64,000 nucleotides of DNA from positions 62,001-126,000 of the IMG/VR virus record IMGVR_UViG_3300030329_006583; one strand, 5' to 3'. The first letter of the stretch is position 1; each line of letters begins with the position of its first letter. The notes beneath the pieces were generated by a model, which ran no database searches, had not been told where the DNA came from, and worked only from the letters and a program-made list of their open reading frames with translations. Made by a program: the position numbers and the translations under genes. This document shows, one piece after another, positions 32,464 to 58,961 of the stretch.

Positions 32464-33627
32464 TTACATGTACCTCCCAAGTGCCTCATTGTACTTTGCG
32501 TTTATAGCATTTTGTGTATGGGTTTTCAACAATTTTTCCCTTAATTCTTGAGCCCATTTTTGAGGCATATAAGGTGATTTTCGAAATTTTTGTAATCTCG
32601 ATATTGCATTGGCCTCGTCAAATTCCGCCCAACTAGAACCTTGCATGAATATCTGGTTATCTGTACGAGATTGTGGAATATTTTCCAACCTATAACTCAC
32701 AGGAATGAATTTTCCTAAATTTAAAAAATCTAGATGGCCCGACCAATTGGTGGCAATAATAGGTAATCCGCTGGCAGCTGCCTCCAATAAAGGTAATCCA
32801 AATCCTTCACCACGCGTTAATGAAACCAAACATTTTATTTTAGGGTGACGGTGCAATGAAGCAATTTCAGAAGAAGAATATCTTCCGTGTAATAAATGCA
32901 CTTTTGGATATTCACCGATCCGCACTTCACTTATAACCTGCCTAACTGTTTTTTCCGTGATGCTTTTGTCTATTGTTGTATTTCTACCGGAATTGGTTTT
33001 TAATACAATGCCAACATTTGGATCATCTTTAAAAATATGGCACATTAAACGTAAGGTATTGAATAAATTTTTACGATCGGTCTCAGGCGAATGTCCCGTA
33101 AATTGACCAAATAACAAAAAATTAAAATCTGTTTCAAAATCCAAATTAGACTCTGGAATGTTTTCTTCCACAATTTCATCATAAAAACATTCAGGGACTA
33201 CTGTAATTGGTGTAGTGCAATGACCCGAATTTAATAATACATTTTTTGTAAAAGTAGATGGCACTATCACATGTTGCATATTATTGCAATTCATAACCCA
33301 CTGTGGATTACACCTATCTGTTTCTACCACTGCAGATATCCCGATATTCACCGTTGCCAAATTTGGATCCCACTCATTAGGAAGTTGCACCTGCAAAGAA
33401 ACATCAAATTTATGATTTGTTAAATCATTGCTTCTCTTCATTATCTCGCCAACCAATCCACCCTCAAAATCCGGATTAATCATCCATGGTGTAATCCCCC
33501 AGGGAACCAATTGACAATAAACATCAATATCCGGCCTTGTCAATAGCCAACGAAAAATCTGCCTTGAATGGGTGCCGTATCCTGAATATGTTAGTAGAGG
33601 TGCTCTTAATAAAACTTGCTTTTTCAT
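32464..33627 (-). CDS. Glycosyltransferase, GT4-like (GT-B)
   Basis: SGYG N-terminal motif, DRKNL, and RGEGFGLPLLEAAASGLPIIATNWSGHLDF (ExFG-x4-E). Confidence 0.9.
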   Translation of the reverse strand: MKKQVLLRAPLLTYSGYGTHSRQIFRWLLTRPDIDVYCQLVPWGITPWMINPDFEGGLVGEIMKRSNDLTNHKFDVSLQVQLPNEWDPNLATVNIGISAVVETDRCNPQWVMNCNNMQHVIVPSTFTKNVLLNSGHCTTPITVVPECFYDEIVEENIPESNLDFETDFNFLLFGQFTGHSPETDRKNLFNTLRLMCHIFKDDPNVGIVLKTNSGRNTTIDKSITEKTVRQVISEVRIGEYPKVHLLHGRYSSSEIASLHRHPKIKCLVSLTRGEGFGLPLLEAAASGLPIIATNWSGHLDFLNLGKFIPVSYRLENIPQSRTDNQIFMQGSSWAEFDEANAISRLQKFRKSPYMPQKWAQELREKLLKTHTQNAINAKYNEALGRYM

Positions 33628-33633
33628 ATTTTT

Positions 33634-34890
33634 CTATATTGTTATCTTGGTGTTAAAAGAATAAGTGTCCCTCCAATTCTCTATCGTGGACTTAAGTGTT
33701 TCATGCCATAAATCTATGGTGGTATCATGTGAAAATTCTTCTAGCACATATTTCCTGGCTTTTTGACCTAATTTTTCCCTACCTTCATCACCTAACTCAT
33801 ACATTTTCATTAATGCATCAGCAATTTCTTGTGCGCTGCAATAATCTTCGTAAATGTAAGGTACAGTTTGTGAACCAACCAACGACTTTAAACTAATGTC
33901 AAGTGCAAATCCATTTTCGGAATCATCTCTATGATCCACAACCTGGCGAGTTAAACCGCCTGTTTTAGCAGCAATGATAGGAGTACCGGTTTGCATGGCT
34001 TCCAACGTAGGTAAACCAAATCCCTCTGCATAACTGACATTAATACAACAATCTGAAATGTTATGAAGGGCATTCATTTGATCAAAATCAACTCTATCTG
34101 TTGAAAAAATAACAACATCTTTTAAATTAAGGTGTTCAGTTATCACCATTAAATTGGGGCCTTCCGGATCAGCGGGATCTGTGTGCATTATTAAATTGAC
34201 TTTTCTATGACCGTATTTTTTTTCAAGCTCATCAACAAACAAAGACCATGCCCACAATAAATCACCGGGACGCTTTCGGCGCGCATTTCTATTAACCCAC
34301 AAGCATGTAAAATAATCATGCCTTTCAGGCCCTATTAATTGATTTTTCCAATAAGATTTTTGTTGTGAATTTAATGGCTTAAATATATTTTCAGGTAATG
34401 AATGAGGAATAAAATTACTTTTTTCCGGAAATAATTCAGAGCACATTTCATATGTTAAATGTGAATGACAATTAATTAAATCAGTCGCTTCATATAATAC
34501 TTTATTGTACTCCGGGGTGGGCCTATTATCCCACACATGCCACCACACAATGGGACAGTGCTGGTGAATTTCATCCTCCATTTCAAATAACCAGATAAAA
34601 AATCTGGGATCTGTAAAAAGAAATATTGCATCTGGGCGCTCTGTTGCTAATGTTTGTCTCAATAAATCCGGATTACCAAACCCATCAATTGGTTTGATAA
34701 TAAAATCCGGATTAACTTCAATAACATCATAATTTGCATGTTTAATCGCGGCGCCGAATTGTCTAAATGACCATTCCCCAGGATATTTTCTTTGTAAACC
34801 CTCTATCAGGTGACGACTTTGTACCCCGACACCAGAAGTACATAAAGCGTGATCAGATAGCATTAATATCTTTTTCTTCTTTATTTCCAT
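33634..34890 (-). CDS. Glycosyltransferase, GT4-like (GT-B)
   Basis: NRNARRK and AEGFGLPTLEAMQTGTPII. Confidence 0.9.
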   Translation of the reverse strand: MEIKKKKILMLSDHALCTSGVGVQSRHLIEGLQRKYPGEWSFRQFGAAIKHANYDVIEVNPDFIIKPIDGFGNPDLLRQTLATERPDAIFLFTDPRFFIWLFEMEDEIHQHCPIVWWHVWDNRPTPEYNKVLYEATDLINCHSHLTYEMCSELFPEKSNFIPHSLPENIFKPLNSQQKSYWKNQLIGPERHDYFTCLWVNRNARRKRPGDLLWAWSLFVDELEKKYGHRKVNLIMHTDPADPEGPNLMVITEHLNLKDVVIFSTDRVDFDQMNALHNISDCCINVSYAEGFGLPTLEAMQTGTPIIAAKTGGLTRQVVDHRDDSENGFALDISLKSLVGSQTVPYIYEDYCSAQEIADALMKMYELGDEGREKLGQKARKYVLEEFSHDTTIDLWHETLKSTIENWRDTYSFNTKITI

Positions 34891-35015
34891 AGTGTTAAAT
34901 TAATCCACTAAGGTGTTTTGTAATTACTTGAACATAACACCTTTTAAAGTTAGTTTTCAATTGAAATATTATATTCTTATTCTAATATCGTAAATTCAAT
35001 CACGTGAACACTATG

Positions 35016-35873: not shown

Positions 35874-35879
35874 TTCTCC

Positions 35880-36707
35880 TTAAATACAATGTTCTGTATT
35901 TGCATATTCACAAAAACGGCATGCATCCCTATTTTTAAAATACAGGCCTTTCCTTACCGAAGAAACCATGTTTCTTACCATTTTTGTAGCTTTTTCTATT
36001 GCCTTTGGTCCTGCTGATATTTGAAAAAATTCACAAACATTACCTGGGGTACCGCCACGCTTTAAAAGAATAAAACCAGTACCTACATCTTTTAAAGGAA
36101 TATTATTCTTAGTTGCCCAATAGTGTTTATAAAGGATAATTTGTGCAAGTGTTAAATTATCTTGTTTTTTTCTTCTGTCCCAGCCATAAGATTTAGCTGT
36201 TTTCCAATCCAGTATCCAATATTTGTATGTGCCGTTTTTACGAGGCACTTTTATAACAACGTCTATAAATCCTTTAAAATTTATATCTTTTCCTTCAACG
36301 TTTTCATATAACATTTCCTCCGCTGATACTAATTCCCAATTGGGAAACGTTTTATCAAGAAAGGCAGGAACATCATTCCACATATTCTCTGCCCATGTAC
36401 ACCATGTTTCCAGGGGTTCATATTTATACCAGCCAGGTTGATTTTTAACCCATTCAGGATCGTCAAATCCATGTTCTTCCCAAGCATCCTTGATGCCTTG
36501 AATCAATTTTTCTTTTGGGATAATTCTAGAATTTAGATAACTTTCACAACCTTCATGTACAGCTGTCCCAAAATCTAGGTAGGGAGAGGGTTTTGAAAGA
36601 TCTATTTTGTCTATATGTTGTAACTTATGCCTATAAGAACATTCCTTCCAACCCCTAACTTCAGAGTAGGAAATATGTTCCTTTCCGGTGGGAAAATTAA
36701 TAATCAT
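35880..36707 (-). CDS. PD-(D/E)XK nuclease, Cas4/AddB-like with a four-Cys cluster
   Basis: ISYS..C, FGTAVH, GFID, DWKT, QxxxY and C-terminal CRFCEY..C. Confidence 0.88.
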   Translation of the reverse strand: MIINFPTGKEHISYSEVRGWKECSYRHKLQHIDKIDLSKPSPYLDFGTAVHEGCESYLNSRIIPKEKLIQGIKDAWEEHGFDDPEWVKNQPGWYKYEPLETWCTWAENMWNDVPAFLDKTFPNWELVSAEEMLYENVEGKDINFKGFIDVVIKVPRKNGTYKYWILDWKTAKSYGWDRRKKQDNLTLAQIILYKHYWATKNNIPLKDVGTGFILLKRGGTPGNVCEFFQISAGPKAIEKATKMVRNMVSSVRKGLYFKNRDACRFCEYANTEHCI

Positions 36708-36736: not shown

Positions 36737-37600
36737 TTACAAATTTTTATTTTTCCAATTAGCAACATAATCAGGAAGATTTATTTGTGGTACCCAATCA
36801 GTTGCCAAAGTGGTTTCCTTAATATCGGCCAAAGTAATTTCAGCCTCACCTGGACGCTTGGGAATATAGGTTATATTATCGCCAAAAAATCTGGCAACTT
36901 CGTTAATCGAATAATTGGTACCTGTCCCCAATTGAAAAACATCACCATCCCACCGATCCTCTGAAAGTGCTATTAATCCCAACACAATATCACTTACGTG
37001 AGTAAAATCACGTCTTTGCTCTCCGGAGCCAGTTACAGTCAAAGGCTCAGATTTTTTTGTTTGGTTCTCAAATATACCAATCACGGTAGCATAAGGGCCT
37101 ACCTTGGGCTGCCTGTACCCATATACATTGAAAAACCTAGCAACCACTGTGGATAGACCATAAACCTTGCTATAAAGCTCACAGGTTTGTTCTCCGGTGT
37201 ATTTTGCAAAAGCGTAAGGATTTAGCATAGGACCACCAAAAGCAGAACTGCTTCCCGCATAAATCAATTTTGCATTTGATCTTCGACAAAATTCTAAAAC
37301 GTGTGAAGTTCCCATAATATCTATTGACAAATATTTTAATGGATCTTTAAAACTGGGTTGAATCCTTGCCAATGCGGCTAAGTGATATACTACGTCAAAC
37401 ACTTCATTTACATATTTATAGGAATTTAAATTCCTAACATCATCAATCCAATATTCAACATTATCCCTCATATATGCCCTGCTGCTGGATTCAGAGCACA
37501 AATTATCCATCACAACAATTTCATTATTTGAATTTGATGCCAATTCATCTACTAAATGTGATCCAACAAAACCTAAACCACCTGTTACCAAAATTCTCAT
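36737..37600 (-). CDS. NAD-dependent epimerase/dehydratase (extended SDR)
   Basis: TGGLGFVG, HLAA, YAFAK (YxxxK), RFFNVYG and GEQRRDFTHV. Confidence 0.92.
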   Translation of the reverse strand: MRILVTGGLGFVGSHLVDELASNSNNEIVVMDNLCSESSSRAYMRDNVEYWIDDVRNLNSYKYVNEVFDVVYHLAALARIQPSFKDPLKYLSIDIMGTSHVLEFCRRSNAKLIYAGSSSAFGGPMLNPYAFAKYTGEQTCELYSKVYGLSTVVARFFNVYGYRQPKVGPYATVIGIFENQTKKSEPLTVTGSGEQRRDFTHVSDIVLGLIALSEDRWDGDVFQLGTGTNYSINEVARFFGDNITYIPKRPGEAEITLADIKETTLATDWVPQINLPDYVANWKNKNL

Positions 37601-37648
37601 TTAAAATCCCTTATTCAAATATATTAATATTTAAAATTCACATATTGA

Positions 37649-38233
37649 TTATAACCAATCTATGAATTGTTGTACAGAAACTAAATTCAAGTAATTTTGG
37701 CGATTTTCCACCAAATCATCCCATTGAAGATCAGTATATGTTTTATTGATTTTAATAGGTGATTGATTTTTCCTAACTCGTATTACACCGCATCCTTGGT
37801 CAATATTTACCGTTATCATGTCTAAACTTGGTTCTTGCCTATAATGAACACATGCCTTCCAGCAATCGCCGTTGGCACCATCTTTAAATTGCCTAAATTC
37901 CTGTAATGGATTGCAATCATGCATAAGAATTGTGCCACCGTCATTCAATATATTAAGTGAATTTTCTATGTCCTTATATACCTGCTCAGCATGGTGTAAT
38001 CCATCAATGAAAATAATATCAAATTTATCATTGTATTTTTCAAAATATTCATCACTAGTCATCCGGTGTTGTCCACCCATATTAGGATCAACACCCACCT
38101 TTTTATCGCAATTAATTTTATCAAAACAAGAAGCTGAATGGTTTACACCTATCTCCAGATAGGTTTTGTATTGAAAAATTTCAATACAGTGATTAATTAA
38201 TTGGTCTCTAGAATTATACAACATTGTTTTCAC
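37649..38233 (-). CDS. Class I SAM-dependent methyltransferase (Methyltransf_24-like)
   Basis: YLEIGV, GVDP, FDIIFIDGLH and GGTILMHD. Confidence 0.85.
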   Translation of the reverse strand: MKTMLYNSRDQLINHCIEIFQYKTYLEIGVNHSASCFDKINCDKKVGVDPNMGGQHRMTSDEYFEKYNDKFDIIFIDGLHHAEQVYKDIENSLNILNDGGTILMHDCNPLQEFRQFKDGANGDCWKACVHYRQEPSLDMITVNIDQGCGVIRVRKNQSPIKINKTYTDLQWDDLVENRQNYLNLVSVQQFIDWL

Positions 38234-38237
38234 CTAC

Positions 38238-38744
38238 TCAAGGAGTTATTTCCCAATCACTTAAATGATACATGCATATTTGATCATACCATTTGCCTTC
38301 ACGCAGCAAAGATTTCAATAATTTTCCCTCTACCTTAAATCCCAAGTATTTATATACCCTTTGGCCTATATGGTTATATTCAACAGTCGTAAGACCAGTT
38401 CTTTTTAGTTTTAAAGTATCATAGCAAAAATTAAGCATTAACCTCCACATTGGTTTGGAATAACCTTTTCCCCGGTGGGTAATGTGAATATCTGCACCAA
38501 GTACACAATTCAAATTATTATGATCAATCTTGTAAAATTTACAAAAACCCACCTTTTCACCATTTACGCAAAATATTTTCCTAATTTCTGTTTTTCCATC
38601 AATGGTACCCCACCATTTCATGTGATCATTAAGGGTGATAGGGGTTGGGTTTGTAAGATTTTTTAATACCAAAGGATCATTATGCAATTCCACCAACCAA
38701 TGATGATCATCATCTGTTACGTCTCTCATTGTATATAAATTCAT
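38238..38744 (-). CDS. GNAT N-acetyltransferase (PseH/RimJ-like)
   Basis: HRGKGYS, N..GQRVYKYLGFKVEG. The likely start is the ATG at 38744, just after the upstream stop. Confidence 0.85.
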   Translation of the reverse strand: MNLYTMRDVTDDDHHWLVELHNDPLVLKNLTNPTPITLNDHMKWWGTIDGKTEIRKIFCVNGEKVGFCKFYKIDHNNLNCVLGADIHITHRGKGYSKPMWRLMLNFCYDTLKLKRTGLTTVEYNHIGQRVYKYLGFKVEGKLLKSLLREGKWYDQICMYHLSDWEITP

Positions 38745-38745
38745 C

Positions 38746-39624
38746 TTATTTTCCCTCAAGATAATATTCACATGCCTCATAAAAATAAATGGAATGTGGG
38801 TTATCCCTAAATTTATGCCTTAATGATCCTCGTTGGTGACACAAAAACGGGGTTCCATCTGGAAATTGATATTCTTCGTTATATTGTTTTACGCCTAAAG
38901 GTAAATCACTTGGATGTGCCGGTGGGCATAAGACCTTTATGTCATGACCTGTGGGGGTTACACCCAAAAGAGGACTTCCGTTAATGAAGGTAAAATAAGG
39001 AATATTTCTCTCTATACAATAAGGCGCAATTTGCCACCCGCTATCCCTATGCAAAGAATAACCGATCGGTAAATTAAAAACAGATGAAAGCTCTTCAGAA
39101 TCTATAGGTAAAGGGGAATCAAGAAATACATCCAATCTTAATTGTGAAAAATCATAGTTTGGTGAAAGAGCAAACCAGGTACAGCTAGGACTATTTTTTG
39201 CAGTTTGAATCCTTCCTTCTCCTGCACAAGGCTGCCCAATATCTTCATAAGTGGTTGCAATTATGCCATATGAATTATCTTCCATCATTTTCTGAACCTT
39301 GGTATCCCATCCCTTATAAACAATAACTGTATCAGTATCTGCAAAAATATTTAAGCATTGGGGGTTCATTTTTTTTAATGCATAATGCAATCCATCAACA
39401 TGATAACTTGATGCATTTTTTTGATCAATATTAACCACGTGGGCGGCACTTAATTGTAGTTCGTTTTTAACGGAATCCACAACACTTTGCGGGGTGTTTA
39501 AAAAATAACCACAAAATTCCAAAGAATTTGTTCCGCTACTGGTGTCACGATAATTAGAAACCAAATAACGATAATAGTCCATGGAATTATTATCTATGAC
39601 AGAATGTATTTGAATAGCTTTCAT
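38746..39624 (-). CDS. Putative GT-A glycosyltransferase
   Basis: H..GL...IFADTDT (DxD) and RDSGW; lies inside the glycan island. Confidence 0.5.
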   Translation of the reverse strand: MKAIQIHSVIDNNSMDYYRYLVSNYRDTSSGTNSLEFCGYFLNTPQSVVDSVKNELQLSAAHVVNIDQKNASSYHVDGLHYALKKMNPQCLNIFADTDTVIVYKGWDTKVQKMMEDNSYGIIATTYEDIGQPCAGEGRIQTAKNSPSCTWFALSPNYDFSQLRLDVFLDSPLPIDSEELSSVFNLPIGYSLHRDSGWQIAPYCIERNIPYFTFINGSPLLGVTPTGHDIKVLCPPAHPSDLPLGVKQYNEEYQFPDGTPFLCHQRGSLRHKFRDNPHSIYFYEACEYYLEGK

Positions 39625-39627
39625 TTC

Positions 39628-41243: not shown

Positions 41244-41247
41244 TATT

Positions 41248-51140: not shown

Positions 51141-51142
51141 TT

Positions 51143-52165: not shown

Positions 52166-52166
52166 T

Positions 52167-52538
52167 TTAATCACCCTTTAAAATACGATAACTGTCACTA
52201 TCGAAATGTTGTGTTGAAAATTCAAATAGCTCCGTATCTTCAAGTGCTATCATCCTATGTCTTAAACCCCGGTAGACATGAAAGTTATCTCCCGGGCCTA
52301 AAATCACTTCTGACGCTGAATCAATATCGTCTGAATCTGAATATATTACGCGTAACTTACCAGATTGAACATAGAAAACCTCGTCTTTTAATTTGTGATA
52401 ATGCCACGAACACATCTTACCTTTCACAAAATATAATAGTTTTCCGCAGTATTCTTCACAATTAACAATCCATTTTTCAAATCCCCATCCCTTGGGCACA
52501 AATTTGATAATATGATTGGTATTAATATCGTTCTTCAT
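52167..52538 (-). CDS. Cupin (sugar isomerase/epimerase-like)
   Basis: KGWGFE..SWHYH..KDEVFYV..G.RH cupin metal motif. Confidence 0.85.
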   Translation of the reverse strand: MKNDINTNHIIKFVPKGWGFEKWIVNCEEYCGKLLYFVKGKMCSWHYHKLKDEVFYVQSGKLRVIYSDSDDIDSASEVILGPGDNFHVYRGLRHRMIALEDTELFEFSTQHFDSDSYRILKGD

Positions 52539-53298
52539 ACTCTTTCCTACTCAATTGATAAGTACCAGATTTTGTAACACTTAGGGAGGCACATTTGTTT
52601 GCGCATTTAACAGAATCTATTAAATCACCAGTTTCCAACCATCTACACACCATAGTTGATAAAAAAACATCACCGGCGCCACATACATCATGTACATCAA
52701 CAGTGTCAGTTGAGTAAATTTTATCCCTATATAATGCGCCACGTGAACCTAAGGTAACAACCAAATCTGTGTCACCAGAGAGATTAATGCAATTATTAAA
52801 TTCTTTTTCATTTATTTTAACAATACAATTTTCAAAAATTGACATGTCATGTTTCTTGGTGTCAACAAATACCTGGGTATTATAGTGTGACACTATATAC
52901 CGAATTAATTCCTTGGTTATATAACCTTTGTCATAATCTGATATTACAATGGCATCATATGATTCATTGGGCAATGATGATGTCTGTAGTGGCACAATAT
53001 GCCCTTCTATGTCATGACGCATAATTTGATAATTTGTTTTTTTATCAATAAACCTAATTTTTTTAATCTGTTGTTTATCATTGCAAAGGTAATTTATTTC
53101 ACCTACCAGTATATTTTTAAAATTTTGATAAACATTTGCGGACATCCCGTGTTTATGTTCTTTGGTAATTTGAGTTAAAATAGGTACCGGTGCCTCAGGA
53201 CTCAACCTATTACATTCTCCATATACATATTCATCGATGCATGCATCACCGATCAACAATATTTTGTATTGTTTTTGTTGTTGAGTATCCTTTAACAT
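52522..53298 (-). CDS. PfkB-family kinase, HldE/RfaE domain I-like (heptose-7-phosphate kinase)
   Basis: IGDACIDEY..RLSPEAPVP, ISDYDKG and DVCGAGDVF. Confidence 0.9.
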   Translation of the reverse strand: MLKDTQQQKQYKILLIGDACIDEYVYGECNRLSPEAPVPILTQITKEHKHGMSANVYQNFKNILVGEINYLCNDKQQIKKIRFIDKKTNYQIMRHDIEGHIVPLQTSSLPNESYDAIVISDYDKGYITKELIRYIVSHYNTQVFVDTKKHDMSIFENCIVKINEKEFNNCINLSGDTDLVVTLGSRGALYRDKIYSTDTVDVHDVCGAGDVFLSTMVCRWLETGDLIDSVKCANKCASLSVTKSGTYQLSRKEYEERY

Positions 53299-53638
53299 AT
53301 TCAAAAATTTTTACCTCACATATATCATTACCAACTACATTTTCTACCTGATAATCTCCTCCCTTCACAATTATATCAGGTTTTATAGATTTGATTAAAA
53401 GATAGGGTGTCTCTTCTTCGAAGATTATTACTTCATCAACACATGATAATTCTAACAATAATGCCCTTCTGTCATCTTCACAATATACGGGTCTTTTATC
53501 ACCTTTTAATTTCTTAACACTAGAATCACTATTTAAACCAACGATTACCTTATCACCAATCTCCTTACAATATTTTAACAATTCGAGATGACCTCTATGA
53601 AACACATCAAAACAACCATTTGTGAAAATAACTTTCAT
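53246..53638 (-). CDS. Heptose-1-phosphate nucleotidyltransferase, HldE/RfaE domain II-like
   Basis: FTNGCFDVFHRGH, GLNSDSSVKKLKG..RP, KGGDY and GYSTT. Confidence 0.92.
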   Translation of the reverse strand: MKVIFTNGCFDVFHRGHLELLKYCKEIGDKVIVGLNSDSSVKKLKGDKRPVYCEDDRRALLLELSCVDEVIIFEEETPYLLIKSIKPDIIVKGGDYQVENVVGNDICEVKIFEYVKGYSTTKTIQNIVDR

Positions 53639-54459
53639 ATATTGCCTTTTATTGCTTCAACTATTTCATTTAAATCATGATATTGGGCATCATTATTACA
53701 TTGTTTACAGGCGATTTTTAATCCACATGGACCATGGGTAGATATTATTATGTTTTTATTTTGTGGATACTGTACCATCCTCTTATCTTGATAACCGGTA
53801 ATTATTACAACAGATTGTGTATTAAATGCTGTTGCACCATGAACCAGGCCACCTTCTGAAGATACAAATAATTTTGACTTGCCAATTATTCCACACGCAA
53901 TCCTAAAACTTTCTGTAAATGTAAGATCTACACAATTTTTTAGTTTTTTTGGACTGGTACCTACCTGTACAACTTGTATTTCCTTTGAAATTTCATCAAC
54001 TATATTTTGCCATTTTTCAAAAGGGTATTCCCTATTTGGCGTGTAATCATGATTAGAAAATGGTTCTATTGTCACAAAATCTTTTTCCAAGTTGGTGATT
54101 GCCGCTTGTACTAGTTTTTCTTCTGATTCATCTAAGAAAATATCACACTTAAGTTCTGGGTTTTCAATCCCATAAACTTCACAAACCTGTTGTATAATAT
54201 GCTTTTCAAATCTATGAAATGCCTTATTAGGTGTATCCTGTTTACAATAATTCGATGCAGGATTGTTTAATTGAAGTGGCACACAATTCTCATTTTGTGC
54301 ATTTTCAGGCTGCCAAATGTGAGGATTATTATAAAATATTACAGACTGCACCGGTTTGATGGTCTGACCATGTTGTTCAAATGGGAAAGATTTAAGCCCG
54401 GATCTTTTATATATTTCTCTTGCGGCAGCTGTCCACGTCAAGTATCCACCTAAACCCAT
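53635..54459 (-). CDS. GT9-like (ADP-heptose-type) glycosyltransferase
   Basis: GLGG N-terminus, REYPFEKWQ, VQVG, SKLFVSSEGGLVHGA and a C-terminal Cys cluster. Adjacent to the HldE-like genes. Confidence 0.75.
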   Translation of the reverse strand: MGLGGYLTWTAAAREIYKRSGLKSFPFEQHGQTIKPVQSVIFYNNPHIWQPENAQNENCVPLQLNNPASNYCKQDTPNKAFHRFEKHIIQQVCEVYGIENPELKCDIFLDESEEKLVQAAITNLEKDFVTIEPFSNHDYTPNREYPFEKWQNIVDEISKEIQVVQVGTSPKKLKNCVDLTFTESFRIACGIIGKSKLFVSSEGGLVHGATAFNTQSVVIITGYQDKRMVQYPQNKNIIISTHGPCGLKIACKQCNNDAQYHDLNEIVEAIKGNI

Positions 54460-55373
54460 TAATGTCCTCCCTCTAAAACCCTCATATACATCTGTGCCAC
54501 TTTCTTTATGTCCAGGTATGAATTATCAATTTCTAATTTTGGGAGCTCTAGGGAAGGTATTAGAATCTCGTAGGGATTATCATAATCAGTCAATTCGAAA
54601 TTATATAGGTTGTTTTCTTCTATGACTATCCCATTTTTTCTTACAATTTCCTTTGTTCCCCCAGAGCTAGAACAAATAACCGGGCAACCTTGAGAAAGGG
54701 ATTCTACCACAACATTTGGACAATGATCCAACCATGCCAAATGTATCATCCAATCCGCGGCTGAAAACATCTGCAAACATGCATCATGAGATATTGAACC
54801 GGTATAAAAAACATCATCATGATTGACCGGACAGTCCGGACTAGATCCCATCACCACCAAACAGGAGCTTGGGTATTTTTCTTTAAGCTTAAAAAATATT
54901 TCCATATTTTCTTTAAGTCTTTTTTGCCTATGCCAGTTTGCAGAACAAACAAACATATGTTTATATGCATTACGGATATTTAAAATCTCAGGTATATCAA
55001 CATTCACCCTTCTGAGTTCTATGCCGTTATGAATAACAACACCTCTTCTTTCCCCCCAATGGTGACATGTCATTTTTTTATCAAATTCAGACTGCCAAAT
55101 AACATAATCACAATTATCATATGCTAACTTTATTCCTTGGTTATGTGTTTTAAATTGGTCTGGTTTAAACCATATACCATCTAATCGCTGAACCTTCATG
55201 GCGTCCAATTTTAATGGTGTTGCCGGCTCAATAAAAATTAAAACAGAATCATAATCATGATTATAACCTACAATTTCATTTCCCATATTAACTAATTCAC
55301 CAGCCAATCTATGCGCAAAAGAATTAGGTCCACTAGTGGAGGAAAAATTGACATTTGAAAAATGAATCTTCAT
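54459..55373 (-). CDS. Glycosyltransferase, GT4-like
   Basis: SGPNSF, QRLDG, VIHNG and DHCPNVVVESLSQGCPVI. Confidence 0.88.
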   Translation of the reverse strand: MKIHFSNVNFSSTSGPNSFAHRLAGELVNMGNEIVGYNHDYDSVLIFIEPATPLKLDAMKVQRLDGIWFKPDQFKTHNQGIKLAYDNCDYVIWQSEFDKKMTCHHWGERRGVVIHNGIELRRVNVDIPEILNIRNAYKHMFVCSANWHRQKRLKENMEIFFKLKEKYPSSCLVVMGSSPDCPVNHDDVFYTGSISHDACLQMFSAADWMIHLAWLDHCPNVVVESLSQGCPVICSSSGGTKEIVRKNGIVIEENNLYNFELTDYDNPYEILIPSLELPKLEIDNSYLDIKKVAQMYMRVLEGGH

Positions 55374-55388: not shown

Positions 55389-56312
55389 TTAATTTTGATA
55401 AAGTTCATTTAGTGTAGAGAACAATTGTGTCATACATTCTTCCCAAGATATAGGAACATAAAGATTTTGAAAATGACTATCATTAAGAATTAATTCTTCA
55501 AGTTCAGTAAATCCACCAAAAACCTTACTTTGTTTTAAGCCAGCATCGGCAAATTCAATAGCACCACCGCCCTCTGCATGTACATATGTAGGCAATCCCA
55601 GCGCCAGAGATTCCAGGATATGATTAGGACCCGGATCAAATCTTGAACCACTAACATATATGTCATGCTTTAATAATTCGTGTGCCAATTCAATACCCGA
55701 TAATGGCGAAATACAATGAGTGTTTTTAAAAGAATTACGATGACGGCCCACATATGTAAATTCTATATCATCCCTTTTTCCCGCCAAATAATCTAAAAAA
55801 TCATATACATCAAATCCCTTGAGGATGTTATTAGACCAATGATGGGTCACTATTTTTAATTTATCAGAATTTGACTTTGTGTTTTTTCTTAGTTTCAAAT
55901 ATGCAGAATTCACACCATTATGCTGAACAGATGTGCTAGGGCATGCCCAGCCTTTTGCACCGAAATATTCCTCCATCCATTTTGAAACAAATATTGTGTG
56001 ATCGATCATTTGGCTACACTGAAGCAGCATTATATCCATATGCTCGGTGTTTTTTCTTGCATCACATTCATTAATTCTCTGAACTAACTTGCAATTTGGA
56101 TTGTGCAACTTATATTGGGAGGCGTCATTAATATTAAATCCCCCCGAATCGCTACGAGGATCCATAAGAAAAATAAGATCTATATTGGTATGTCCTAGGT
56201 TGGTGACAATCTCAATGGAATTAAGATTACAAAAATCAAAAAATCCCTTAACAAAATGATTACCTCCACCCCATGGGCCAGGACGAGGAGAACGATTGAT
56301 TGCAATTTTCAT
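55389..56312 (-). CDS. Glycosyltransferase, GT4-like
   Basis: PWGGGNHF, KGFD and SRFDPGPNHILESLALGLP. Confidence 0.85.
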   Translation of the reverse strand: MKIAINRSPRPGPWGGGNHFVKGFFDFCNLNSIEIVTNLGHTNIDLIFLMDPRSDSGGFNINDASQYKLHNPNCKLVQRINECDARKNTEHMDIMLLQCSQMIDHTIFVSKWMEEYFGAKGWACPSTSVQHNGVNSAYLKLRKNTKSNSDKLKIVTHHWSNNILKGFDVYDFLDYLAGKRDDIEFTYVGRHRNSFKNTHCISPLSGIELAHELLKHDIYVSGSRFDPGPNHILESLALGLPTYVHAEGGGAIEFADAGLKQSKVFGGFTELEELILNDSHFQNLYVPISWEECMTQLFSTLNELYQN

Positions 56313-57031
56313 GATATAAATCCCCGGCTTCTTAGATAATCACCTTCACTTTTCTGAAACTTTGCATCATCGGTTTGAAATGTTTCGGGTTTCATGTCAA
56401 TTGTGTAATGGTAGGTAACTATGGGTTCATAATGCCAATTTCCTGCTGCTTGATGTAACACTGGGAGATATATTGTTTGATCACCAATTCGTTTAAAATA
56501 CTCCCCATCTTCACCACGAAAATTTGCATCTTTTACGTTTTCAATAAGTGATTTTCGAAATGTTTTTAAATGTGATGATACCCATGGATGTTCATAAGGA
56601 TTGGCAGTTTTAGGTAGTGGTGCTGATATATTGTGATTAGAAAATGACCATCTATGTGCAGTCCATAATGCACCAACATTTAAGGTATTATAATGATGAT
56701 TAATAATAGTCAATGCATCACAATCACACAACCAATCATCGCCATCCAATCTGCAGATAATATCATTTGATTCTGTTTCCTTGAGTCCTTCAACAATATT
56801 TTTAATTTCCCAATGTTTTTCTGTGTTAACAGTTAAGCTTATTTTATCATCACCAAAACCAAATTGTCTTTTGAAATTATCTATTACTTCAGGGGTGCCA
56901 TCAGTTGACATGTCATCCCTAATTATGATTTTCCAATTATTATGTGTTTGAAAACCCACTGAAAAAAGGCTTCGGGTAATTGTTGATGCAGCATTGAACG
57001 CCGGCATAATAAAAACAAAACGATTATTCAC
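56309..57031 (-). CDS. GT2-family glycosyltransferase
   Basis: IMPAFNA, DDMSTDGT and LDGDDWL. Confidence 0.9.
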   Translation of the reverse strand: MNNRFVFIMPAFNAASTITRSLFSVGFQTHNNWKIIIRDDMSTDGTPEVIDNFKRQFGFGDDKISLTVNTEKHWEIKNIVEGLKETESNDIICRLDGDDWLCDCDALTIINHHYNTLNVGALWTAHRWSFSNHNISAPLPKTANPYEHPWVSSHLKTFRKSLIENVKDANFRGEDGEYFKRIGDQTIYLPVLHQAAGNWHYEPIVTYHYTIDMKPETFQTDDAKFQKSEGDYLRSRGFIS

Positions 57032-58961
57032 CTAAATATTCCTTAATACATGTTGGATGTGATATATCAAGTTCCAGGTGTTGTGTTGGTTTAGAGAAAT
57101 CTACTCTTTCATGAAAAACCCATCCCCCCATCTTTTCTTTTAATTCTTGGGCCAGGTTATCAATTTCTTCTTCAGTAACATCTTTCCACGCTTTATCAAA
57201 AAACATGTTATTTTCAGGAATGTCTTCTTGTGTAATGTTATAAAGGCTAAGCCAGTGTTTTGACCAATAGTTTTTATACGTTCTTATTTTTCTTCCCAAA
57301 TCAAACCAAGAATAATGATGAACAGAGGGTAATAATTCTATGTTTCTACCAAACCATTCCTGATATTTTTCAAATGCTTCCTTATTTCCTGCCATGGCGT
57401 GAATCCTTAGGTTATGTGCATCTGTATGATAAAAAGATGCATGTGCTATTACTTCACCGGTATCATTATCAATATAATCACAACCATCTGTACCCATTGC
57501 TGCGTACAAATTATTGTCTTCATCATATTTTCTAAAATTAGCAGGAATTCCATGAGTAATGTGATTTTTATTTCTAGAAATTCTCCACTTCCATGGAGTT
57601 ACATCCATTCTCACCTTTTCTTCAGAACCCCAATATTCCACAACTGGAAGACACACTAAATCTACTTGTGTAGGAAATGATTTAATCAAATTAAATATTT
57701 TTTCATAATCATTTTCATGCACTACTTCATCGGAATCCTGTTGCCAACAAAAATCTCCGTTGCACAAAGATCTCGCGTGTGCCTTCTGTGTACCATCAAA
57801 AACTGCATGTCTGGGGTGATTCCAATCTTTTTCATTTTTGAATACTTTCAATCTCTCTTCTGTTTTTGACCATTCCTCTAGTTTTTCCCAGGTGCCATCA
57901 GTTGAACCACCGTCAACCACTATCACTTCATCACAAAAACCCAACATCGATGTAATAGAGGCTTCATAAGGATATTTTTGAGAAATACAATCTTTCGTTG
58001 TAGTATAACCAGAAAGGCTAGGTCTCCAATCCATTGAGTGTTTAATTCCTTTCCAAAACGTTTCTCGAGCGGCATACAAATAAGCCTCGGTATCGAATGC
58101 ATCATCTGTATTAAACCATATTTCATCCTTATGCTGAACATTATCATTTAAGTGAAGTTTGCAACCTAACATTTTCGCTTCTATCACCATTCTTGGGCAT
58201 GTATCACCCCCAGCTGGCAAATAAACAAAGCCTTCGGCTTGTGCCAATCTCTCTAGTACTTCTTCATAAGGTAAATTCCATACTACTTCATAATCTTTAT
58301 TGTTTTCCTTGCACCATTGTTCTGCAGATTCTGCACCTTTAACCCAGCTCGTAGAACCCAATACAATCCAACCCTTTCTTTCATGGGATGAATATTTTTC
58401 ATTTAATAATTTAACAGTAAGAAAAAAATTATGATCAAAAACAGAACTTAATACTGTATTATTTTTTTCCTCAAGAAATGGAAATACTTTAAAATATATT
58501 TCTTGCTGTTTTTCTGACATCCACCAAAGAGATTGTGCCCCATAATAAAATGCAGATATCATTTTTCCATGCATTTCATTGTGACAGTTACACATATGTG
58601 ACTCGGCGGCATAATGCTTGTCTGGTGAACGGTACTTACAATACTTGTAATCATATTCTAAAATAGAATAATTTAAATTTCCAACAATGCTGGGAATTAA
58701 ATTCATATCCATATTGGAAAAGTTACCAAATACCCAATATTTTTCATATCCGGATTCTAGAATTTCCAACGTTAAATCTTTACTTTTTAGTTTAAAAATA
58801 TCAAAAGGACATGAGGTTATTAATGCATCAGATGTAAGTTCAGCACCCCCACAATATTCTTCAGCAAACATGTCTGAAACAAAGATTATTTCTGTGTTTT
58901 CCGGAATTTCAATAGCAGTTGAATTCGATGATGTGTTAAATGGACTACTAGAACCAAACAT
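57024..58961 (-). CDS. Bifunctional glycosyltransferase: N-terminal GT-B fused to C-terminal GT2
   Basis: GGAEL..KG..DTCPRMVIEAKMLGC (GT-B), then VVDGGSTDGT..QDSDE (GT-A). GGAGG precedes the ATG at 58961. Confidence 0.85.
   Translation of the reverse strand: MFGSSSPFNTSSNSTAIEIPENTEIIFVSDMFAEEYCGGAELTSDALITSCPFDIFKLKSKDLTLEILESGYEKYWVFGNFSNMDMNLIPSIVGNLNYSILEYDYKYCKYRSPDKHYAAESHMCNCHNEMHGKMISAFYYGAQSLWWMSEKQQEIYFKVFPFLEEKNNTVLSSVFDHNFFLTVKLLNEKYSSHERKGWIVLGSTSWVKGAESAEQWCKENNKDYEVVWNLPYEEVLERLAQAEGFVYLPAGGDTCPRMVIEAKMLGCKLHLNDNVQHKDEIWFNTDDAFDTEAYLYAARETFWKGIKHSMDWRPSLSGYTTTKDCISQKYPYEASITSMLGFCDEVIVVDGGSTDGTWEKLEEWSKTEERLKVFKNEKDWNHPRHAVFDGTQKAHARSLCNGDFCWQQDSDEVVHENDYEKIFNLIKSFPTQVDLVCLPVVEYWGSEEKVRMDVTPWKWRISRNKNHITHGIPANFRKYDEDNNLYAAMGTDGCDYIDNDTGEVIAHASFYHTDAHNLRIHAMAGNKEAFEKYQEWFGRNIELLPSVHHYSWFDLGRKIRTYKNYWSKHWLSLYNITQEDIPENNMFFDKAWKDVTEEEIDNLAQELKEKMGGWVFHERVDFSKPTQHLELDISHPTCIKEYLGE

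What the first reader, a model, noticed from the sequence alone, without database searches (positions are those of the whole stretch)
32464..58961. 26.5-kb phage glycan island with no membrane or export machinery: candidate soluble virion-glycosylation system
Seen: 29 co-oriented, tightly coupled genes. About 13 are GT-like, including a GT-B/GT-A fusion. The rest are sugar-nucleotide enzymes (UDP-Glc dehydrogenase, SDR epimerase, Glf, 4,6-dehydratase, DegT, RmlD-like, HldE-like pair, cupin), tailoring enzymes and one nuclease. I see no Wzx/Wzy/Wzz, ABC exporter, polyprenyl-phosphate initiating transferase or multi-pass membrane protein. Established: cellular O-antigen/capsule loci and Gtr-type serotype converters need lipid carriers and membrane proteins, while some giant viruses glycosylate their own particle proteins with virus-encoded enzymes. 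Inference: the island builds a complex, decorated glycan on a cytoplasmic acceptor. The most plausible acceptors are the virion proteins encoded just downstream.
Basis: partly seen in the sequence, partly recalled or inferred. Interest (0 to 1): 0.88.

Follow-up and report, generated by a model that had tools for sequence, protein, structure and literature searches.

The report
Membrane-free sugar island in marine jumbo phage
A 267-kb marine T4-like phage devotes a tenth of its genome to making unusual activated sugars and joining them with soluble enzymes, next to its tail genes and with no export machinery; this fits sugar-coating of its own particle, but that is not shown, and the gene set is a larger member of clusters already described in marine phages.

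Summary
There are 29 minus-strand genes at 32464-58961. All named sugar-nucleotide and tailoring enzymes are confirmed. Nine glycosyltransferases are supported, one is probable and three are unresolved. None of the 29 proteins has a transmembrane segment.

New findings:
- The island is composite. A hypervariable 27-gene unit (g46 to g20) is followed, after a 125-bp gap, by two GT4 genes (g19, g18).
- g19 and g18 are core genes in at least 108 IMG/VR contigs and are tightly packed with baseplate-proximal genes.
- Among 287 non-redundant island proteins from relatives, none is multi-pass.
- 68% of this genome, and the whole genome of a cultured relative (Flavobacterium phage immuto), show no flippase, polymerase, ABC exporter or polyprenyl transferase.
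- Published nucleoside analysis of immuto DNA reported dA, dC, dT and fdPreQ1 only.

Virion glycosylation is my best reading (about 0.42) but is unproven. Core-LPS (LOS-type) remodelling also needs no dedicated membrane genes and remains a serious rival.

The same modules (HldE-like pair, cupin, carbamoyltransferase, epimerases, many transferases) are already described in jumbo cyanophages. I therefore rate it a new member of a known kind, with unknown target.

The parts
57024..58961 (-). g46: two-domain transferase with a GT-B-like (CgeB/GT4-like) N-terminal half and a GT-A/GT2 C-terminal half. It is the conserved first gene of the variable unit.
   Evidence: Pfam Glycos_transf_2 at residues 353-459. 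46-67% identical in 6 relatives, with start at the conserved Met10. A g43-family HMM hits residues 217-278. AF2 pLDDT 73.5. Best PDB neighbours are the SunS/ThuS peptide S-glycosyltransferases, E 3e-9. A BFVD CgeB-like hit was also found.
56309..57031 (-). g45: GT2 glycosyltransferase.
   Evidence: Pfam PF00535, 61.8 bits. 43-73% identical in relatives next to g46.
55389..56312 (-). g44: GT-B (GT4-like) transferase with no direct Pfam hit.
   Evidence: Iterative HMM family reaches the Pfam-GT4 protein g43. Homologues found in L004, L005, L041, L099 and L112.
54459..55373 (-). g43: GT4 glycosyltransferase.
   Evidence: Pfam Glycos_transf_1, 46.2 bits.
53635..54459 (-). g42: GT9 (heptosyltransferase)-like protein; borderline assignment.
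   Evidence: Pfam PF01075 at 22.0 bits, equal to the cut-off. NCBIfam heptosyltransferase I/II at about 1e-3. No PDB sequence hit.
52167..53638 (-). g41, g40, g39: HldE domain II-like nucleotidyltransferase, HldE domain I-like PfkB kinase, and a cupin. Together they form a candidate NDP-heptose-type cassette.
   Evidence: rfaE_dom_II at 162 bits (cut-off 181.5) and rfaE_dom_I at 131 bits. Cupin_2. The block is conserved in L003, and the cupin is 70-87% identical across relatives. The nucleotidyltransferase has homologues beside a carbamoyltransferase in cyanophages S-CAM1 and S-CAM3.
51143..52174 (-). g38: GT2-like transferase (weak).
   Evidence: Pfam PF00535 at 21.1 bits, below the cut-off. 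Iterative HMM family includes g45.
49488..51158 (-). g37: NodU/CmcH-type O-carbamoyltransferase.
   Evidence: Carbam_trans_C, 201 bits. Homologues in 136 phage records, mostly T4-like cyanophages and pelagiphage HTVC008M.
48353..49501 (-). g36: GT-B fold transferase belonging to a Pfam-less family found on jumbo-phage contigs.
   Evidence: 45 homologues, none with a Pfam domain, on contigs of up to 349 kb. AF2 pLDDT 92.5. Foldseek top hits are TreT, MshA, BshA, PglA and WaaG.
47261..48349 (-). g35: UDP-galactopyranose mutase (Glf).
   Evidence: Pfam GLF, 250.6 bits.
43531..46378 (-). g33, g32, g31: PseB-like UDP-GlcNAc 4,6-dehydratase, PseC-like aminotransferase, and a sugar N-formyltransferase-like protein. 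Predicted product: a 2-acetamido-4-acylamino-2,4,6-trideoxyhexose nucleotide.
   Evidence: PseB at 281 bits and PseC at 272 bits, both below their equivalog cut-offs; formyltransferase PRK06988/PRK07579. Pfam results.
46392..47255 (-). g34: unknown protein; GT-A suspected from DxD-like motifs only.
   Evidence: No Pfam or NCBIfam hit. hhalign 5.8% to the GT2 family.
42785..43531 (-). g30: probable GT-A transferase.
   Evidence: No Pfam hit. hhalign 76% to the N-terminus of the g45 GT2 family.
40578..42782 (-). g29 (RmlD-like reductase), g28 (unknown) and g27 (formyltransferase-like).
   Evidence: g28 has two weak homologues in relatives.
38746..40566 (-). g26 and g25: unknown soluble proteins.
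   Evidence: No Pfam, NCBIfam or PDB hits. g26 has only two distant homologues among 5.8 billion proteins.
36737..38780 (-). g24 (GNAT, PseH-like), g23 (Methyltransf_24) and g22 (SDR epimerase/dehydratase).
   Evidence: g22 homologues sit next to the nuclease in about 40 relatives.
35880..36707 (-). g21: PD-(D/E)XK nuclease. It is a conserved neighbour of the GT4 pair and is probably not a glycan enzyme.
   Evidence: Pfam PDDEXK_1, 73.8 bits. It precedes g19 in nearly all relatives, and also in Flavobacterium phage immuto and Microcystis phage Mel-JY01.
35016..35873 (-). g20: short NDP-sugar dehydrogenase lacking the C-terminal UDP-binding domain.
   Evidence: TIGR03026 at 200 bits, above the cut-off. 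Length is conserved at 279-300 aa in about 40 relatives.
32464..34890 (-). g19 and g18: core GT4 pair. They are the first genes of a tightly packed unit (g19 to g12) that runs into the baseplate genes.
   Evidence: Pfam Glycos_transf_1. g19 is 57-72% identical in at least 108 IMG/VR loci. The order g21-g19-g18-g17-g16-g15-g14...gp25-J is conserved. There is a 125-bp gap ahead of g19, and gaps of 9 bp or less down to g12.
28652..32461 (-). g17 (small protein with one TM segment) and g16, g15, g14, g13, g12: conserved unknown proteins packed with the GT4 pair, directly upstream of gp25-like g11.
945..28542 (-). Baseplate wedge (gp25-like g11, J/gp6-like g10), fibre-like g4 and g5, lectin-domain g8, and giant proteins.
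   Evidence: PHROG and Pfam hits. No Ser/Thr-rich or collagen tracts.

Best explanation
The island is a self-contained cytoplasmic glycan factory of a marine T4-like jumbo phage.

Proposed steps:
1. Soluble enzymes make several activated sugars. These are UDP-galactofuranose (Glf); a PseB/PseC-type 4-amino-4,6-dideoxy-hexosamine that is then N-formylated or N-acetylated; a uronic-acid-type product (short dehydrogenase plus SDR); and an NDP-heptose-type sugar (cupin, kinase, nucleotidyltransferase).
2. Nine to thirteen soluble transferases join these sugars stepwise.
3. O-carbamoyl and methyl groups are added.
4. The chain is built directly on a soluble acceptor rather than on a lipid carrier. 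The most likely acceptors are proteins of the phage's own particle (fibres, baseplate or capsid decoration), modified while virions assemble.
5. The two conserved GT4 enzymes (g19, g18), and probably g46/g45, lay down a conserved inner part on a conserved phage acceptor. The hypervariable middle of the island diversifies the outer part between related phages.

Shown: the enzyme families, their solubility, the clade-wide architecture and the genomic position.
Inferred: the sugar identities, the order of action, and above all the acceptor.
For: 1. No TM segment in the 29 proteins. None of 287 non-redundant island proteins from about 70 relatives has two or more hydrophobic segments. No membrane family appears among the 25 commonest Pfam families of 148 of them.
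2. No flippase, polymerase, ABC exporter or polyprenyl-phosphate transferase family, and no enzyme-like multi-pass protein, in 182 kb (68%) of this phage's own genome. The same holds for the complete annotated genome of the cultured relative Flavobacterium phage immuto.
3. Cellular variable glycan loci carry their own Wzx/Wzy or ABC genes because these track glycan structure (established knowledge). Their total absence from a hypervariable phage locus argues against a flippase-dependent lipid-linked route.
4. Position: the island lies between PhoH (plus a fibre gene in L004, L005, L008 and L092) and the gp25/J baseplate genes. g19 and g18 are packed with conserved baseplate-proximal genes.
5. 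g19 is the best-conserved gene of the block (57-72% identity, against 39-57% for baseplate J). This points to a conserved, probably phage-encoded, acceptor.
6. The T4 late-promoter consensus TATAAATA lies within 80 nt upstream of the g19 homologue in 6 of 69 relatives (0.18 expected).
7. The g46 GT-A half is structurally closest to the soluble peptide glycosyltransferases SunS and ThuS. This is weak evidence.
8. DNA as acceptor is disfavoured. Immuto DNA gave dA, dC, dT and fdPreQ1 only (PMC10516641).
9. Precedents exist: mycobacteriophage capsid and tail-tube glycosylation (cited), and clade-specific rare-sugar pathways that glycosylate giant-virus fibrils (PMC10117803, PMC9614988).
Against: - There is no direct evidence of any glycoprotein, and no acceptor motif or Ser/Thr-rich tract in the downstream structural proteins.
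- In phage immuto the homologous cluster lies 22 kb from the baseplate, after lysis and replication genes. Linkage to structural genes is therefore not universal.
- The HldE-like pair and the GT9-like protein are hallmarks of LPS inner-core synthesis. LOS-type assembly needs no dedicated membrane genes.
- 32% of the genome was not screened.
- Promoter and terminator scans were uninformative. The late-promoter signal comes from a related subclade, so the six cases are not independent.
- Published readings of equivalent cyanophage clusters favour host-surface change.
Confidence: 0.42

Rival explanations
1. Host envelope remodelling. The phage enzymes extend the host's lipid A-core on the inner face of the cytoplasmic membrane (LOS-type). 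Alternatively, they extend a host-initiated undecaprenyl-linked unit. The host's own MsbA/Lpt, or its Wzx and ligase, then carry the product to the cell surface. The changed surface would block superinfection, or stop progeny from sticking to debris.
For: - The HldE-like kinase and nucleotidyltransferase and the GT9-like protein are the classic ADP-heptose and heptosyltransferase set of the LPS inner core.
- GT4, GT2 and GT9 transferases of core and O-unit assembly are soluble or peripheral in cells (established knowledge), so lack of TM proteins does not exclude this reading.
- The same modules in jumbo cyanophages are read this way (PMC7824862; PMC12801897).
- Variability between relatives (287 clusters from 488 proteins) resembles surface-antigen diversity.
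- A conserved lipid A-Kdo acceptor could also explain the conserved core transferases.
Against: - Not one Wzx, Wzy, ABC or initiating gene was captured in more than 70 variable loci. Nor was one found in 68% of this genome or in the whole immuto genome. This is hard to reconcile with a flippase- or polymerase-dependent route, though not with the LOS route.
- GmhA- and GmhB-type genes are absent from the island.
- The position inside late-type structural genes and the T4-late motif in a subclade would make surface change come too late to matter in a lytic cycle.
- No lysogeny genes were seen in the screened regions.
Confidence: 0.3
2. DNA hypermodification. The transferases attach sugars to modified bases of phage DNA to evade restriction. 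The conserved PD-(D/E)XK nuclease would remove unmodified DNA.
For: - Nuclease-GT-GT linkage is conserved from this clade to phages immuto and Mel-JY01.
- Virus-encoded transferases are known to decorate 5hmC DNA with diverse glycans (bioRxiv 10.1101/2023.12.21.572611).
Against: - Immuto DNA contains dA, dC, dT and fdPreQ1, with no glycosylated nucleoside reported.
- No hydroxymethylase, TET/5mYOX or DpdA family appears in the Pfam lists for 68% of this genome; only MT-A70 and a weak dCMP deaminase hit were seen.
- Thirteen transferases plus carbamoyl, formyl and methyl tailoring go beyond the DNA glycans I know of (own knowledge, not checked here).
Confidence: 0.06
3. A soluble glycoside or oligosaccharide product that is not attached to any macromolecule, for example an aminoglycoside-like metabolite, a compatible solute or a signalling sugar. 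It would be made to manipulate the host or competitors.
For: - Carbamoyl-, formyl- and methyl-transferases, an aminotransferase, and the DHQ-synthase-like, radical SAM and sulfotransferase genes in relatives resemble natural-product tailoring.
- Iyer et al. raised a secondary-metabolite reading for a second cyanophage cluster.
- No membrane step would be needed.
Against: - Nine to thirteen transferases imply a long chain rather than a small glycoside.
- There is no aglycone pathway or exporter.
- Conservation of two core transferases beside virion genes is unexplained by this reading.
Confidence: 0.08

Closest known systems
'LPS' / cell-wall synthesis and modification gene clusters of jumbo T4-like cyanophages (P-SSM2 15-gene cluster, S-SCSM1, S-SCSM2R with 13 transferases). 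Sources: PMC7824862 and PMC12801897.
   Same: - Marine T4-like myovirus context.
- Same parts list: NAD-dependent epimerases/dehydratases, cupin, PfkB sugar kinase, HIGH-type nucleotidyltransferase, several GT families, carbamoyltransferase and O-methyltransferases.
- Direct homologues of g37 and g41 lie side by side in S-CAM1, S-CAM3 and P-TIM68.
- The target is untested in both cases.
   Different: - Larger here: 29 genes and 26.5 kb.
- Different phage lineage, with no DNA-level match to any isolate.
- Bipartite build, with a core GT4 pair conserved in more than 100 genomes plus a hypervariable middle.
- Inserted in the fibre/baseplate module.
- Clade-wide absence of membrane proteins is documented here but has not been examined for the cyanophage clusters. 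S-SCSM2R is even annotated with a PgaA-like exporter.
'Moraphages', an aquatic jumbo-phage lineage with predicted Bacteroidota hosts (PMC12619734).
   Same: - Genome size (200-307 kb) and aquatic origin.
- PhoH, gp13, gp6, prohead protease and DNA polymerase I core genes.
- Hc1 histone-like protein, HSP20 and glutamine synthetase. All are found in this contig.
- That paper reports four core orthogroups of putative glycosyltransferases with no assigned target.
   Different: - Membership could not be tested, because no moraphage sequence was available.
- The paper does not describe the island, its variability or its lack of membrane components.
Autonomous virion glycosylation of giant viruses: Megavirinae fibrils and chlorovirus capsid (PMC10117803, PMC9614988, PMC8456856).
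   Same: - Virus-encoded pathways for rare bacterial-type amino and deoxy sugars.
- Clade-specific gene clusters.
- Soluble multi-domain transferases. BFVD neighbours of g46 include mimivirid and klosneuvirus transferases.
   Different: - Those are eukaryotic viruses in which glycans on virion proteins were chemically demonstrated.
- Here nothing is demonstrated, and the host is a bacterium.
Mycobacteriophage virion glycosylation (Freeman et al. 2023, as cited).
   Same: Phage-encoded transferases modify the phage's own capsid and tail proteins in the cytoplasm.
   Different: - Those systems have one to a few transferases and use host sugar nucleotides.
- Their acceptors are C-terminal tails of capsid and tail-tube subunits.
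- No comparable tract was seen in the structural proteins of this window.
Cellular O-antigen/capsule loci and Gtr serotype-conversion cassettes.
   Same: Sugar-nucleotide genes plus GT2, GT4 and GT9 transferases, with hypervariability between relatives.
   Different: No initiating polyprenyl-phosphate transferase, Wzx, Wzy, Wzz, ABC exporter or GtrA/B/C-type membrane protein here or in the relatives.
Bacterial autotransporter heptosyltransferases (TibC/AAH; PMC4358343).
   Same: This is a precedent for soluble, cytoplasmic transfer of heptose from ADP-heptose onto a protein by a GT9-related enzyme. It shows that the heptose module need not mean LPS.
   Different: g42 is much shorter (274 aa) and showed no sequence match to TibC or to any PDB chain. 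The relation is conceptual only.

Membership tests
Wzx/Wzy- or ABC-dependent O-antigen/capsule locus | Initiating polyprenyl-phosphate sugar transferase (WecA/WbaP type) | tested here: not met
   No such Pfam family and no multi-pass protein in the island, in relatives, or in 68% of the genome.
Wzx/Wzy- or ABC-dependent O-antigen/capsule locus | Flippase plus polymerase, or ABC exporter, plus chain-length regulator | tested here: not met
   Same calls. The multi-TM proteins found in relatives lie in the baseplate module. They are tape-measure-like hydrophobic repeat proteins without Pfam enzyme hits.
Wzx/Wzy- or ABC-dependent O-antigen/capsule locus | Sugar-nucleotide synthesis genes plus several transferases | tested here: met
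Gtr-type serotype-conversion cassette | GtrA flippase, GtrB bactoprenol glucosyltransferase and a membrane GtrC | tested here: not met
   No membrane proteins. The GT2 proteins g45 and g46 lack TM segments.
Jumbo/T4-like marine phage glycan ('LPS/CWSM') clusters | T4-like myovirus genome | tested here: met
   gp25 and J in the window. Gp23, Portal_T4, gp13, gp19, S77 and T4_baseplate elsewhere on the contig.
Jumbo/T4-like marine phage glycan ('LPS/CWSM') clusters | Parts list of SDR epimerases, cupin, PfkB kinase, HIGH nucleotidyltransferase, multiple GT families and carbamoyltransferase (as described in PMC7824862) | tested here: met
   compared with the description read. Homologues in cyanophages are shown.
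Jumbo/T4-like marine phage glycan ('LPS/CWSM') clusters | Product goes to the host surface (the reading proposed in the literature) | not testable with these tools
   No experiment exists for any member.
Phage or giant-virus virion glycosylation system | Virus-encoded transferases linked to virion genes | tested here: met
   Island flanked by fibre and baseplate genes. The linkage is not kept in the distant relative immuto.
Phage or giant-virus virion glycosylation system | Glycan chemically shown on virion proteins | not testable with these tools
   Needs purified virions.
Phage or giant-virus virion glycosylation system | Recognisable acceptor tract (such as a Ser/Thr-rich tail) in structural proteins | tested here: inconclusive
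   None found in g1-g17. The capsid and tail-tube proteins lie outside the window and were not examined.
DNA glycosylation (T4 / 5hmC-glycan type) | Pathway to a hydroxymethyl-pyrimidine or other acceptor base | tested here: not met
   No such family in the Pfam lists for 68% of the genome. One third of the genome was not screened.
DNA glycosylation (T4 / 5hmC-glycan type) | Glycosylated nucleosides in virion DNA | tested here: inconclusive
   Not reported in the cultured relative immuto. Not testable for this phage.
Pseudaminic acid pathway (PseB, C, H, G, I, F) | PseB, PseC and PseH | tested here: inconclusive
   These are the best NCBIfam matches, but all fall below the equivalog cut-offs: 281 vs 408 bits, 272 vs 424 bits, and 45 vs 93 bits.
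Pseudaminic acid pathway (PseB, C, H, G, I, F) | PseG hydrolase, PseI (NeuB) synthase and PseF CMP-transferase | tested here: not met
   None in the island. NeuB and CTP_transf_3 do occur in relatives' islands.
ADP-heptose pathway (GmhA, HldE or HldA+HldC, GmhB) | Kinase and adenylyltransferase | tested here: inconclusive
   rfaE domains I and II are the best hits, at 131 vs 345 bits and 162 vs 181.5 bits.
ADP-heptose pathway (GmhA, HldE or HldA+HldC, GmhB) | SIS-type isomerase GmhA and HAD phosphatase GmhB | tested here: not met
   Absent from the island. The cupin g39 might replace the isomerase; this is inference only.

The most novel reading that the evidence does not exclude
A widespread lineage of marine jumbo phages (at least 108 contigs) coats its own virions with complex glycans made entirely by phage-encoded soluble enzymes. 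A conserved inner part is laid down by core GT4 enzymes. An outer part is diversified by a hypervariable 20-30-kb gene island. This would be a bacterial-virus counterpart of giant-virus autonomous glycosylation, with glycan 'serotypes' of phage particles.
Probability: 0.4. Interest if true: 0.82.

Novelty: new member of a known kind. Interest (0 to 1): 0.55.

Why it matters
Large sugar-gene clusters in marine jumbo phages have been known since P-SSM2, but their target has never been tested. The usual reading is host-surface change.

This locus gives the cleanest argument so far that the product may not pass through a lipid-linked export route at all. It is also a tractable case:
- a conserved pair of transferases that can serve as a marker gene;
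- more than 100 natural variants of the island;
- two cultured relatives (Flavobacterium phage immuto, Microcystis phage Mel-JY01) in which virion glycoprotein, LPS and DNA tests can be run.

If virions are glycosylated, that would affect how we think about several things. These include phage stability, adsorption, grazing and sinking in the ocean, recognition by host glycan-sensing defences, and the carbon cost of infection.

If host LPS is remodelled instead, this would be a large lytic-phage investment in superinfection exclusion.

Tried and rejected
- Sigma-70 promoter and intrinsic-terminator scans of 26-64 kb gave counts equal to shuffled controls, so they were uninformative.
- Nucleotide search against 50,697 phage records found only short Glf matches and no related isolate.
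- The genome-contig scan with the DegT protein found only remote hits, so no host or donor clue was gained.
- Single-sequence and small-profile searches of the PDB for g25, g26, g28, g36, g44, g46 and g42 found nothing significant.
- hhalign of the singletons g25, g26, g34, g36 and g28 against the island's own GT families was negative. g36 was only resolved by structure prediction.
- I first took g20 for a truncated pseudogene left by recombination. I rejected this because the short form is conserved in about 40 relatives and passes TIGR03026.
- I took the 310-380-aa multi-TM proteins in relatives as possible Wzy or ligase enzymes. I rejected this because they lie between g14 and gp25, are Ile/Leu/Glu-rich repeat proteins without enzyme hits, and resemble tape-measure or ejection proteins.
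- I looked for flagellin-type (Maf) nonulosonic-acid transferases in a relative's cassette. The cassette turned out to be cytidylyltransferase + DegT + DHQ-synthase-like + SIS, with no Maf.
- A search for Ser/Thr-rich, collagen-like or repeat acceptor tracts in g1-g17 found none.
- The idea that the island's formyltransferases serve 7-deazaguanine DNA modification (DpdN-like) was set aside. No DpdA or Que genes were seen, and the formyltransferases sit beside the aminotransferase.

Full report
**Source and setting**

The window is positions 62001-126000 of IMGVR_UViG_3300030329_006583, a 267,118-bp contig. The same genome is present as a 267,145-bp contig in a Tara Oceans assembly (ERZ909129, run ERR594341).

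Every long ORF is on the minus strand; one short plus-strand gene is noted below. GC content is 30-46%.

Genes downstream of the island (lower coordinates) are:
- a gp25-like and a J/gp6-like baseplate wedge;
- fibre-like proteins with a shared C-terminal module;
- a lectin-domain protein;
- giant proteins of up to 2250 aa.

Genes upstream are a PIN-PhoH fusion, a tubulin-like protein, a tmRNA and an RNase H-like protein.

Elsewhere the contig encodes T4-type Gp23, portal, gp13, gp19, prohead protease, sheath and terminase. It also encodes an Hc1 histone-like protein, HSP20 and glutamine synthetase. That combination matches the published description of 'moraphages', aquatic jumbo phages with predicted Bacteroidota hosts whose core genome holds four glycosyltransferase orthogroups (PMC12619734). 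I could not test membership directly.

**The observation**

There are 29 ORFs from 32464 to 58988.

Pfam and NCBIfam confirm every named enzyme:
- short NDP-sugar dehydrogenase, SDR epimerase and Glf;
- PseB-like 4,6-dehydratase, PseC-like aminotransferase and RmlD-like reductase;
- a split HldE-like kinase and nucleotidyltransferase, and a cupin;
- a methyltransferase, a GNAT, two formyltransferase-like proteins and a carbamoyltransferase;
- a PD-(D/E)XK nuclease.

The equivalog-level matches (PseB, PseC, PseH, rfaE domains) all fall below NCBI's cut-offs. The names therefore describe the reaction type, not orthology.

Transferase count:
- Five proteins pass Pfam (g18, g19, g43, g45, g46).
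- g42 sits exactly on the GT9 cut-off, and g38 is just under the GT2 cut-off.
- g44 and g38 are tied to g43 and g45 by iterative HMM searches in a pool of 1,687 proteins from relatives.
- g36 belongs to a Pfam-less family of 45 proteins found on contigs of up to 349 kb. It folds with pLDDT 92.5 into a GT-B enzyme; Foldseek hits include TreT, MshA, BshA, PglA and WaaG.
- g46 is a fusion. A g43-family HMM hits residues 217-278, a CgeB-like viral GT-B aligns, and the C-terminal half is GT-A.
- g30 is probably GT-A.
- g25, g26 and g34 remain unassigned.

A Kyte-Doolittle scan finds no TM segment in any of the 29 proteins. The nearest membrane protein is the 105-aa g17 just downstream.

**Architecture and relatives**

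Spacing divides the region into two units.
- g46 to g20 has no gap above 48 bp and is preceded by a 154-bp gap.
- After a 125-bp gap, g19, g18 and g17-g12 follow with gaps of 9 bp or less, and they end 109 bp before gp25-like g11.

The motif TATAATAT occurs four times on the coding strand. Two of these lie in exactly the two gaps ahead of g46 and g19.

Comparison with IMG/VR shows why the break matters.
- g19 has relatives in at least 108 viral contigs at 57-72% identity.
- Nearly all of them keep the order nuclease-g19-g18-g17-g16-g15-g14-...-gp25-J-g9.
- g19 is more conserved than the baseplate proteins beside it.
- Upstream of the nuclease the content changes from phage to phage. From 80 loci, 488 ORFs of 150 aa or more collapse only to 287 clusters at 50% identity.
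- A Pfam census of 148 of these gives epimerases, cytidylyltransferases, many methyltransferases, GT2, DegT, radical SAM, sulfotransferases, NeuB and DHQ-synthase-like enzymes.

At the other end, PhoH-g46-g45 is conserved in the closer relatives. In several of them a giant fibre-like gene sits between PhoH and g46.

The distance from PhoH to g19 varies widely:
- about 6 kb in L014, which lacks g46;
- about 9 kb in L092 and L098;
- 24 kb in this window;
- 28-34 kb in other relatives.

One is a hypervariable sugar locus. The other is a conserved GT4 pair that belongs with the baseplate-proximal genes.

**Membrane machinery**

None of the 287 non-redundant island proteins has two or more hydrophobic segments. 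Fifteen have one marginal stretch, mostly Rossmann-fold homologues.

I walked along the phage's own contig and covered record positions 9,504-191,658, which is 68% of the genome. The precomputed Pfam lists show no Polysacc_synt, Wzy, ABC2, Bac_transf or MraY-type family there. The only proteins over 200 aa with two or more hydrophobic segments are a 1625-aa tape-measure-like protein and proteins of 1140 aa and 563 aa with two segments each.

The multi-TM proteins of 310-380 aa seen in about 20 relatives lie between g14 and gp25. They are Ile/Leu/Glu-rich repeat proteins with no enzyme match.

**Cultured relatives**

Immuto and Mel-JY01 both keep a PD-(D/E)XK nuclease close upstream of the GT pair, which is followed by more sugar genes. 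In immuto these are GT2, WecE-type aminotransferases, a methyltransferase, a PglD-like 'pilin glycosylation protein' and an epimerase.

The complete immuto genome (242 features) has no annotated exporter or initiating transferase. Its only large multi-TM proteins are the tape measure and one 381-aa hypothetical protein.

In immuto the cluster is 22 kb from the baseplate, so linkage to virion genes is a feature of this clade and not of the whole family.

Immuto DNA has been analysed by LC-UV-MS. It contains dA, dC, dT and fdPreQ1 in place of dG, with no glycosylated nucleoside reported (PMC10516641).

**Interpretation**

Cellular variable glycan loci carry their own flippase and polymerase, or an ABC exporter, because these must fit the glycan (established knowledge). 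A phage locus that turns over its sugar genes this fast, yet never holds a membrane gene, is unlikely to feed a flippase-dependent route. That leaves two classes of acceptor: a soluble one (protein, DNA or small molecule), or lipid A-core, whose flipping by MsbA is tolerant of structure.

Four points favour virion protein:
- the position inside the fibre/baseplate module;
- the tight packing of the core GT4 pair with baseplate-proximal genes;
- a T4 late-promoter consensus ahead of the g19 homologue in 6 of 69 relatives, against 0.18 expected (these six are related, not independent);
- a weak structural resemblance of the g46 GT-A half to the peptide glycosyltransferases SunS and ThuS.

Precedents are mycobacteriophage virion glycosylation (cited) and the clade-specific rare-sugar pathways of giant viruses. 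The heptose module need not imply LPS, because TibC-type enzymes put heptose on proteins in the cytoplasm (PMC4358343).

Against this reading:
- nothing is shown chemically;
- no acceptor tract is visible;
- the HldE/GT9 signature fits LPS core;
- the literature on the nearest known clusters prefers host-surface change.

My estimates are: virion glycosylation 0.42, host envelope remodelling 0.30 (mostly the LOS route), free glycoside 0.08, DNA 0.06, and the remainder unknown.

**Novelty**

The parts list is almost word for word that given for jumbo cyanophage clusters in PMC7824862. S-SCSM2R was reported with 13 transferases. Homologues of g37 and g41 lie together in S-CAM1, S-CAM3 and P-TIM68. 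The thing itself is thus a new, larger member of a known kind in a little-studied lineage.

What is new here is the bipartite architecture, the scale of its variability, and the clade-wide and near genome-wide absence of membrane components. Together these make the virion reading testable in two cultured relatives.

Noticed in passing
window 62004-62405 (-): Phage-encoded tmRNA (Rfam RF00023, 128 bits, full length) with tag peptide ANTDTYNDYALAA.
   Followed up: partly
window 60805-61953 (-): Tubulin/FtsZ-family GTPase (Pfam 33.9 bits), 70-72% identical in relatives L004 and L005. It may be a PhuZ-like cytoskeletal protein in a phage that otherwise looks T4-like.
   Followed up: no
window 59143-60462 (-): PIN-domain/PhoH fusion, conserved at 47-66% identity in more than 25 IMG/VR contigs. 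It is a useful marker for the lineage.
   Followed up: partly
window 60497-60808 (+): The only plus-strand gene of the window. It is 103 aa and has a Sigma70_r4 hit in the precomputed Pfam table, so it is a possible small sigma or anti-sigma-like regulator.
   Followed up: no
window 35016-35873 (-) and about 40 relatives: NDP-sugar dehydrogenase lacking the C-terminal UDP-binding domain, conserved at 279-300 aa and usually next to the nuclease and an SDR. Full-length forms (375-397 aa) occur in L041 and L068.
   Followed up: partly
window 52167-52538 (-): The cupin g39 is 70-87% identical across relatives whose neighbouring genes are only 35-60% identical. It is either under unusually strong constraint or recently exchanged.
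   Followed up: no
window 12182-16853 (-): Fibre-like g4 and g5 share a 67-aa C-terminal module at 57% identity. g4 is a Gly/Ser/Thr/Ala/Asp-rich beta-helix-type protein and accounts for the local GC peak of 0.46.
   Followed up: partly
window 12121-12181 (-): Strong intrinsic-terminator-like hairpin (GGGTGGGCGGC...GCCCACC followed by a T run) between g4 and g3.
   Followed up: no
L129 1506-3670 (ENA contig record about 40.4-42.5 kb): A second small sugar cluster about 22 kb beyond PhoH: a cytidylyltransferase-like protein, Methyltransf_24 and a eukaryotic-type phosphomannomutase.
   Followed up: no
L127, L133, L134, L126 (same contig outside the window): Other genes on the contig: Hc1 histone-like protein, HSP20, glutamine synthetase, the PrkA/SpoVR/DUF444 trio, ribosomal protein S21, Acb5, MT-A70, malate synthase, and an intein plus HNH in ribonucleotide reductase.
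   Followed up: no
L014 12442-14475: A relative with almost no variable island carries a 677-aa collagen-repeat protein between PhoH and the core GT4 pair.
   Followed up: no
L086 1900-5329 (also L083, L099, L106): Recurrent cassette of cytidylyltransferase + DegT aminotransferase + DHQ-synthase-like enzyme + SIS-like protein, followed in L086 by an S-adenosylhomocysteine hydrolase next to the nuclease. It is possibly an amino-octulosonic or cyclitol-type sugar pathway.
   Followed up: partly
L115 6343-7485 (phage immuto gene 85): A 381-aa hypothetical protein with four hydrophobic segments lies two genes upstream of the nuclease-GT-GT cluster in the cultured relative. It has no Pfam hit and no similarity to proteins of this clade.
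   Followed up: partly
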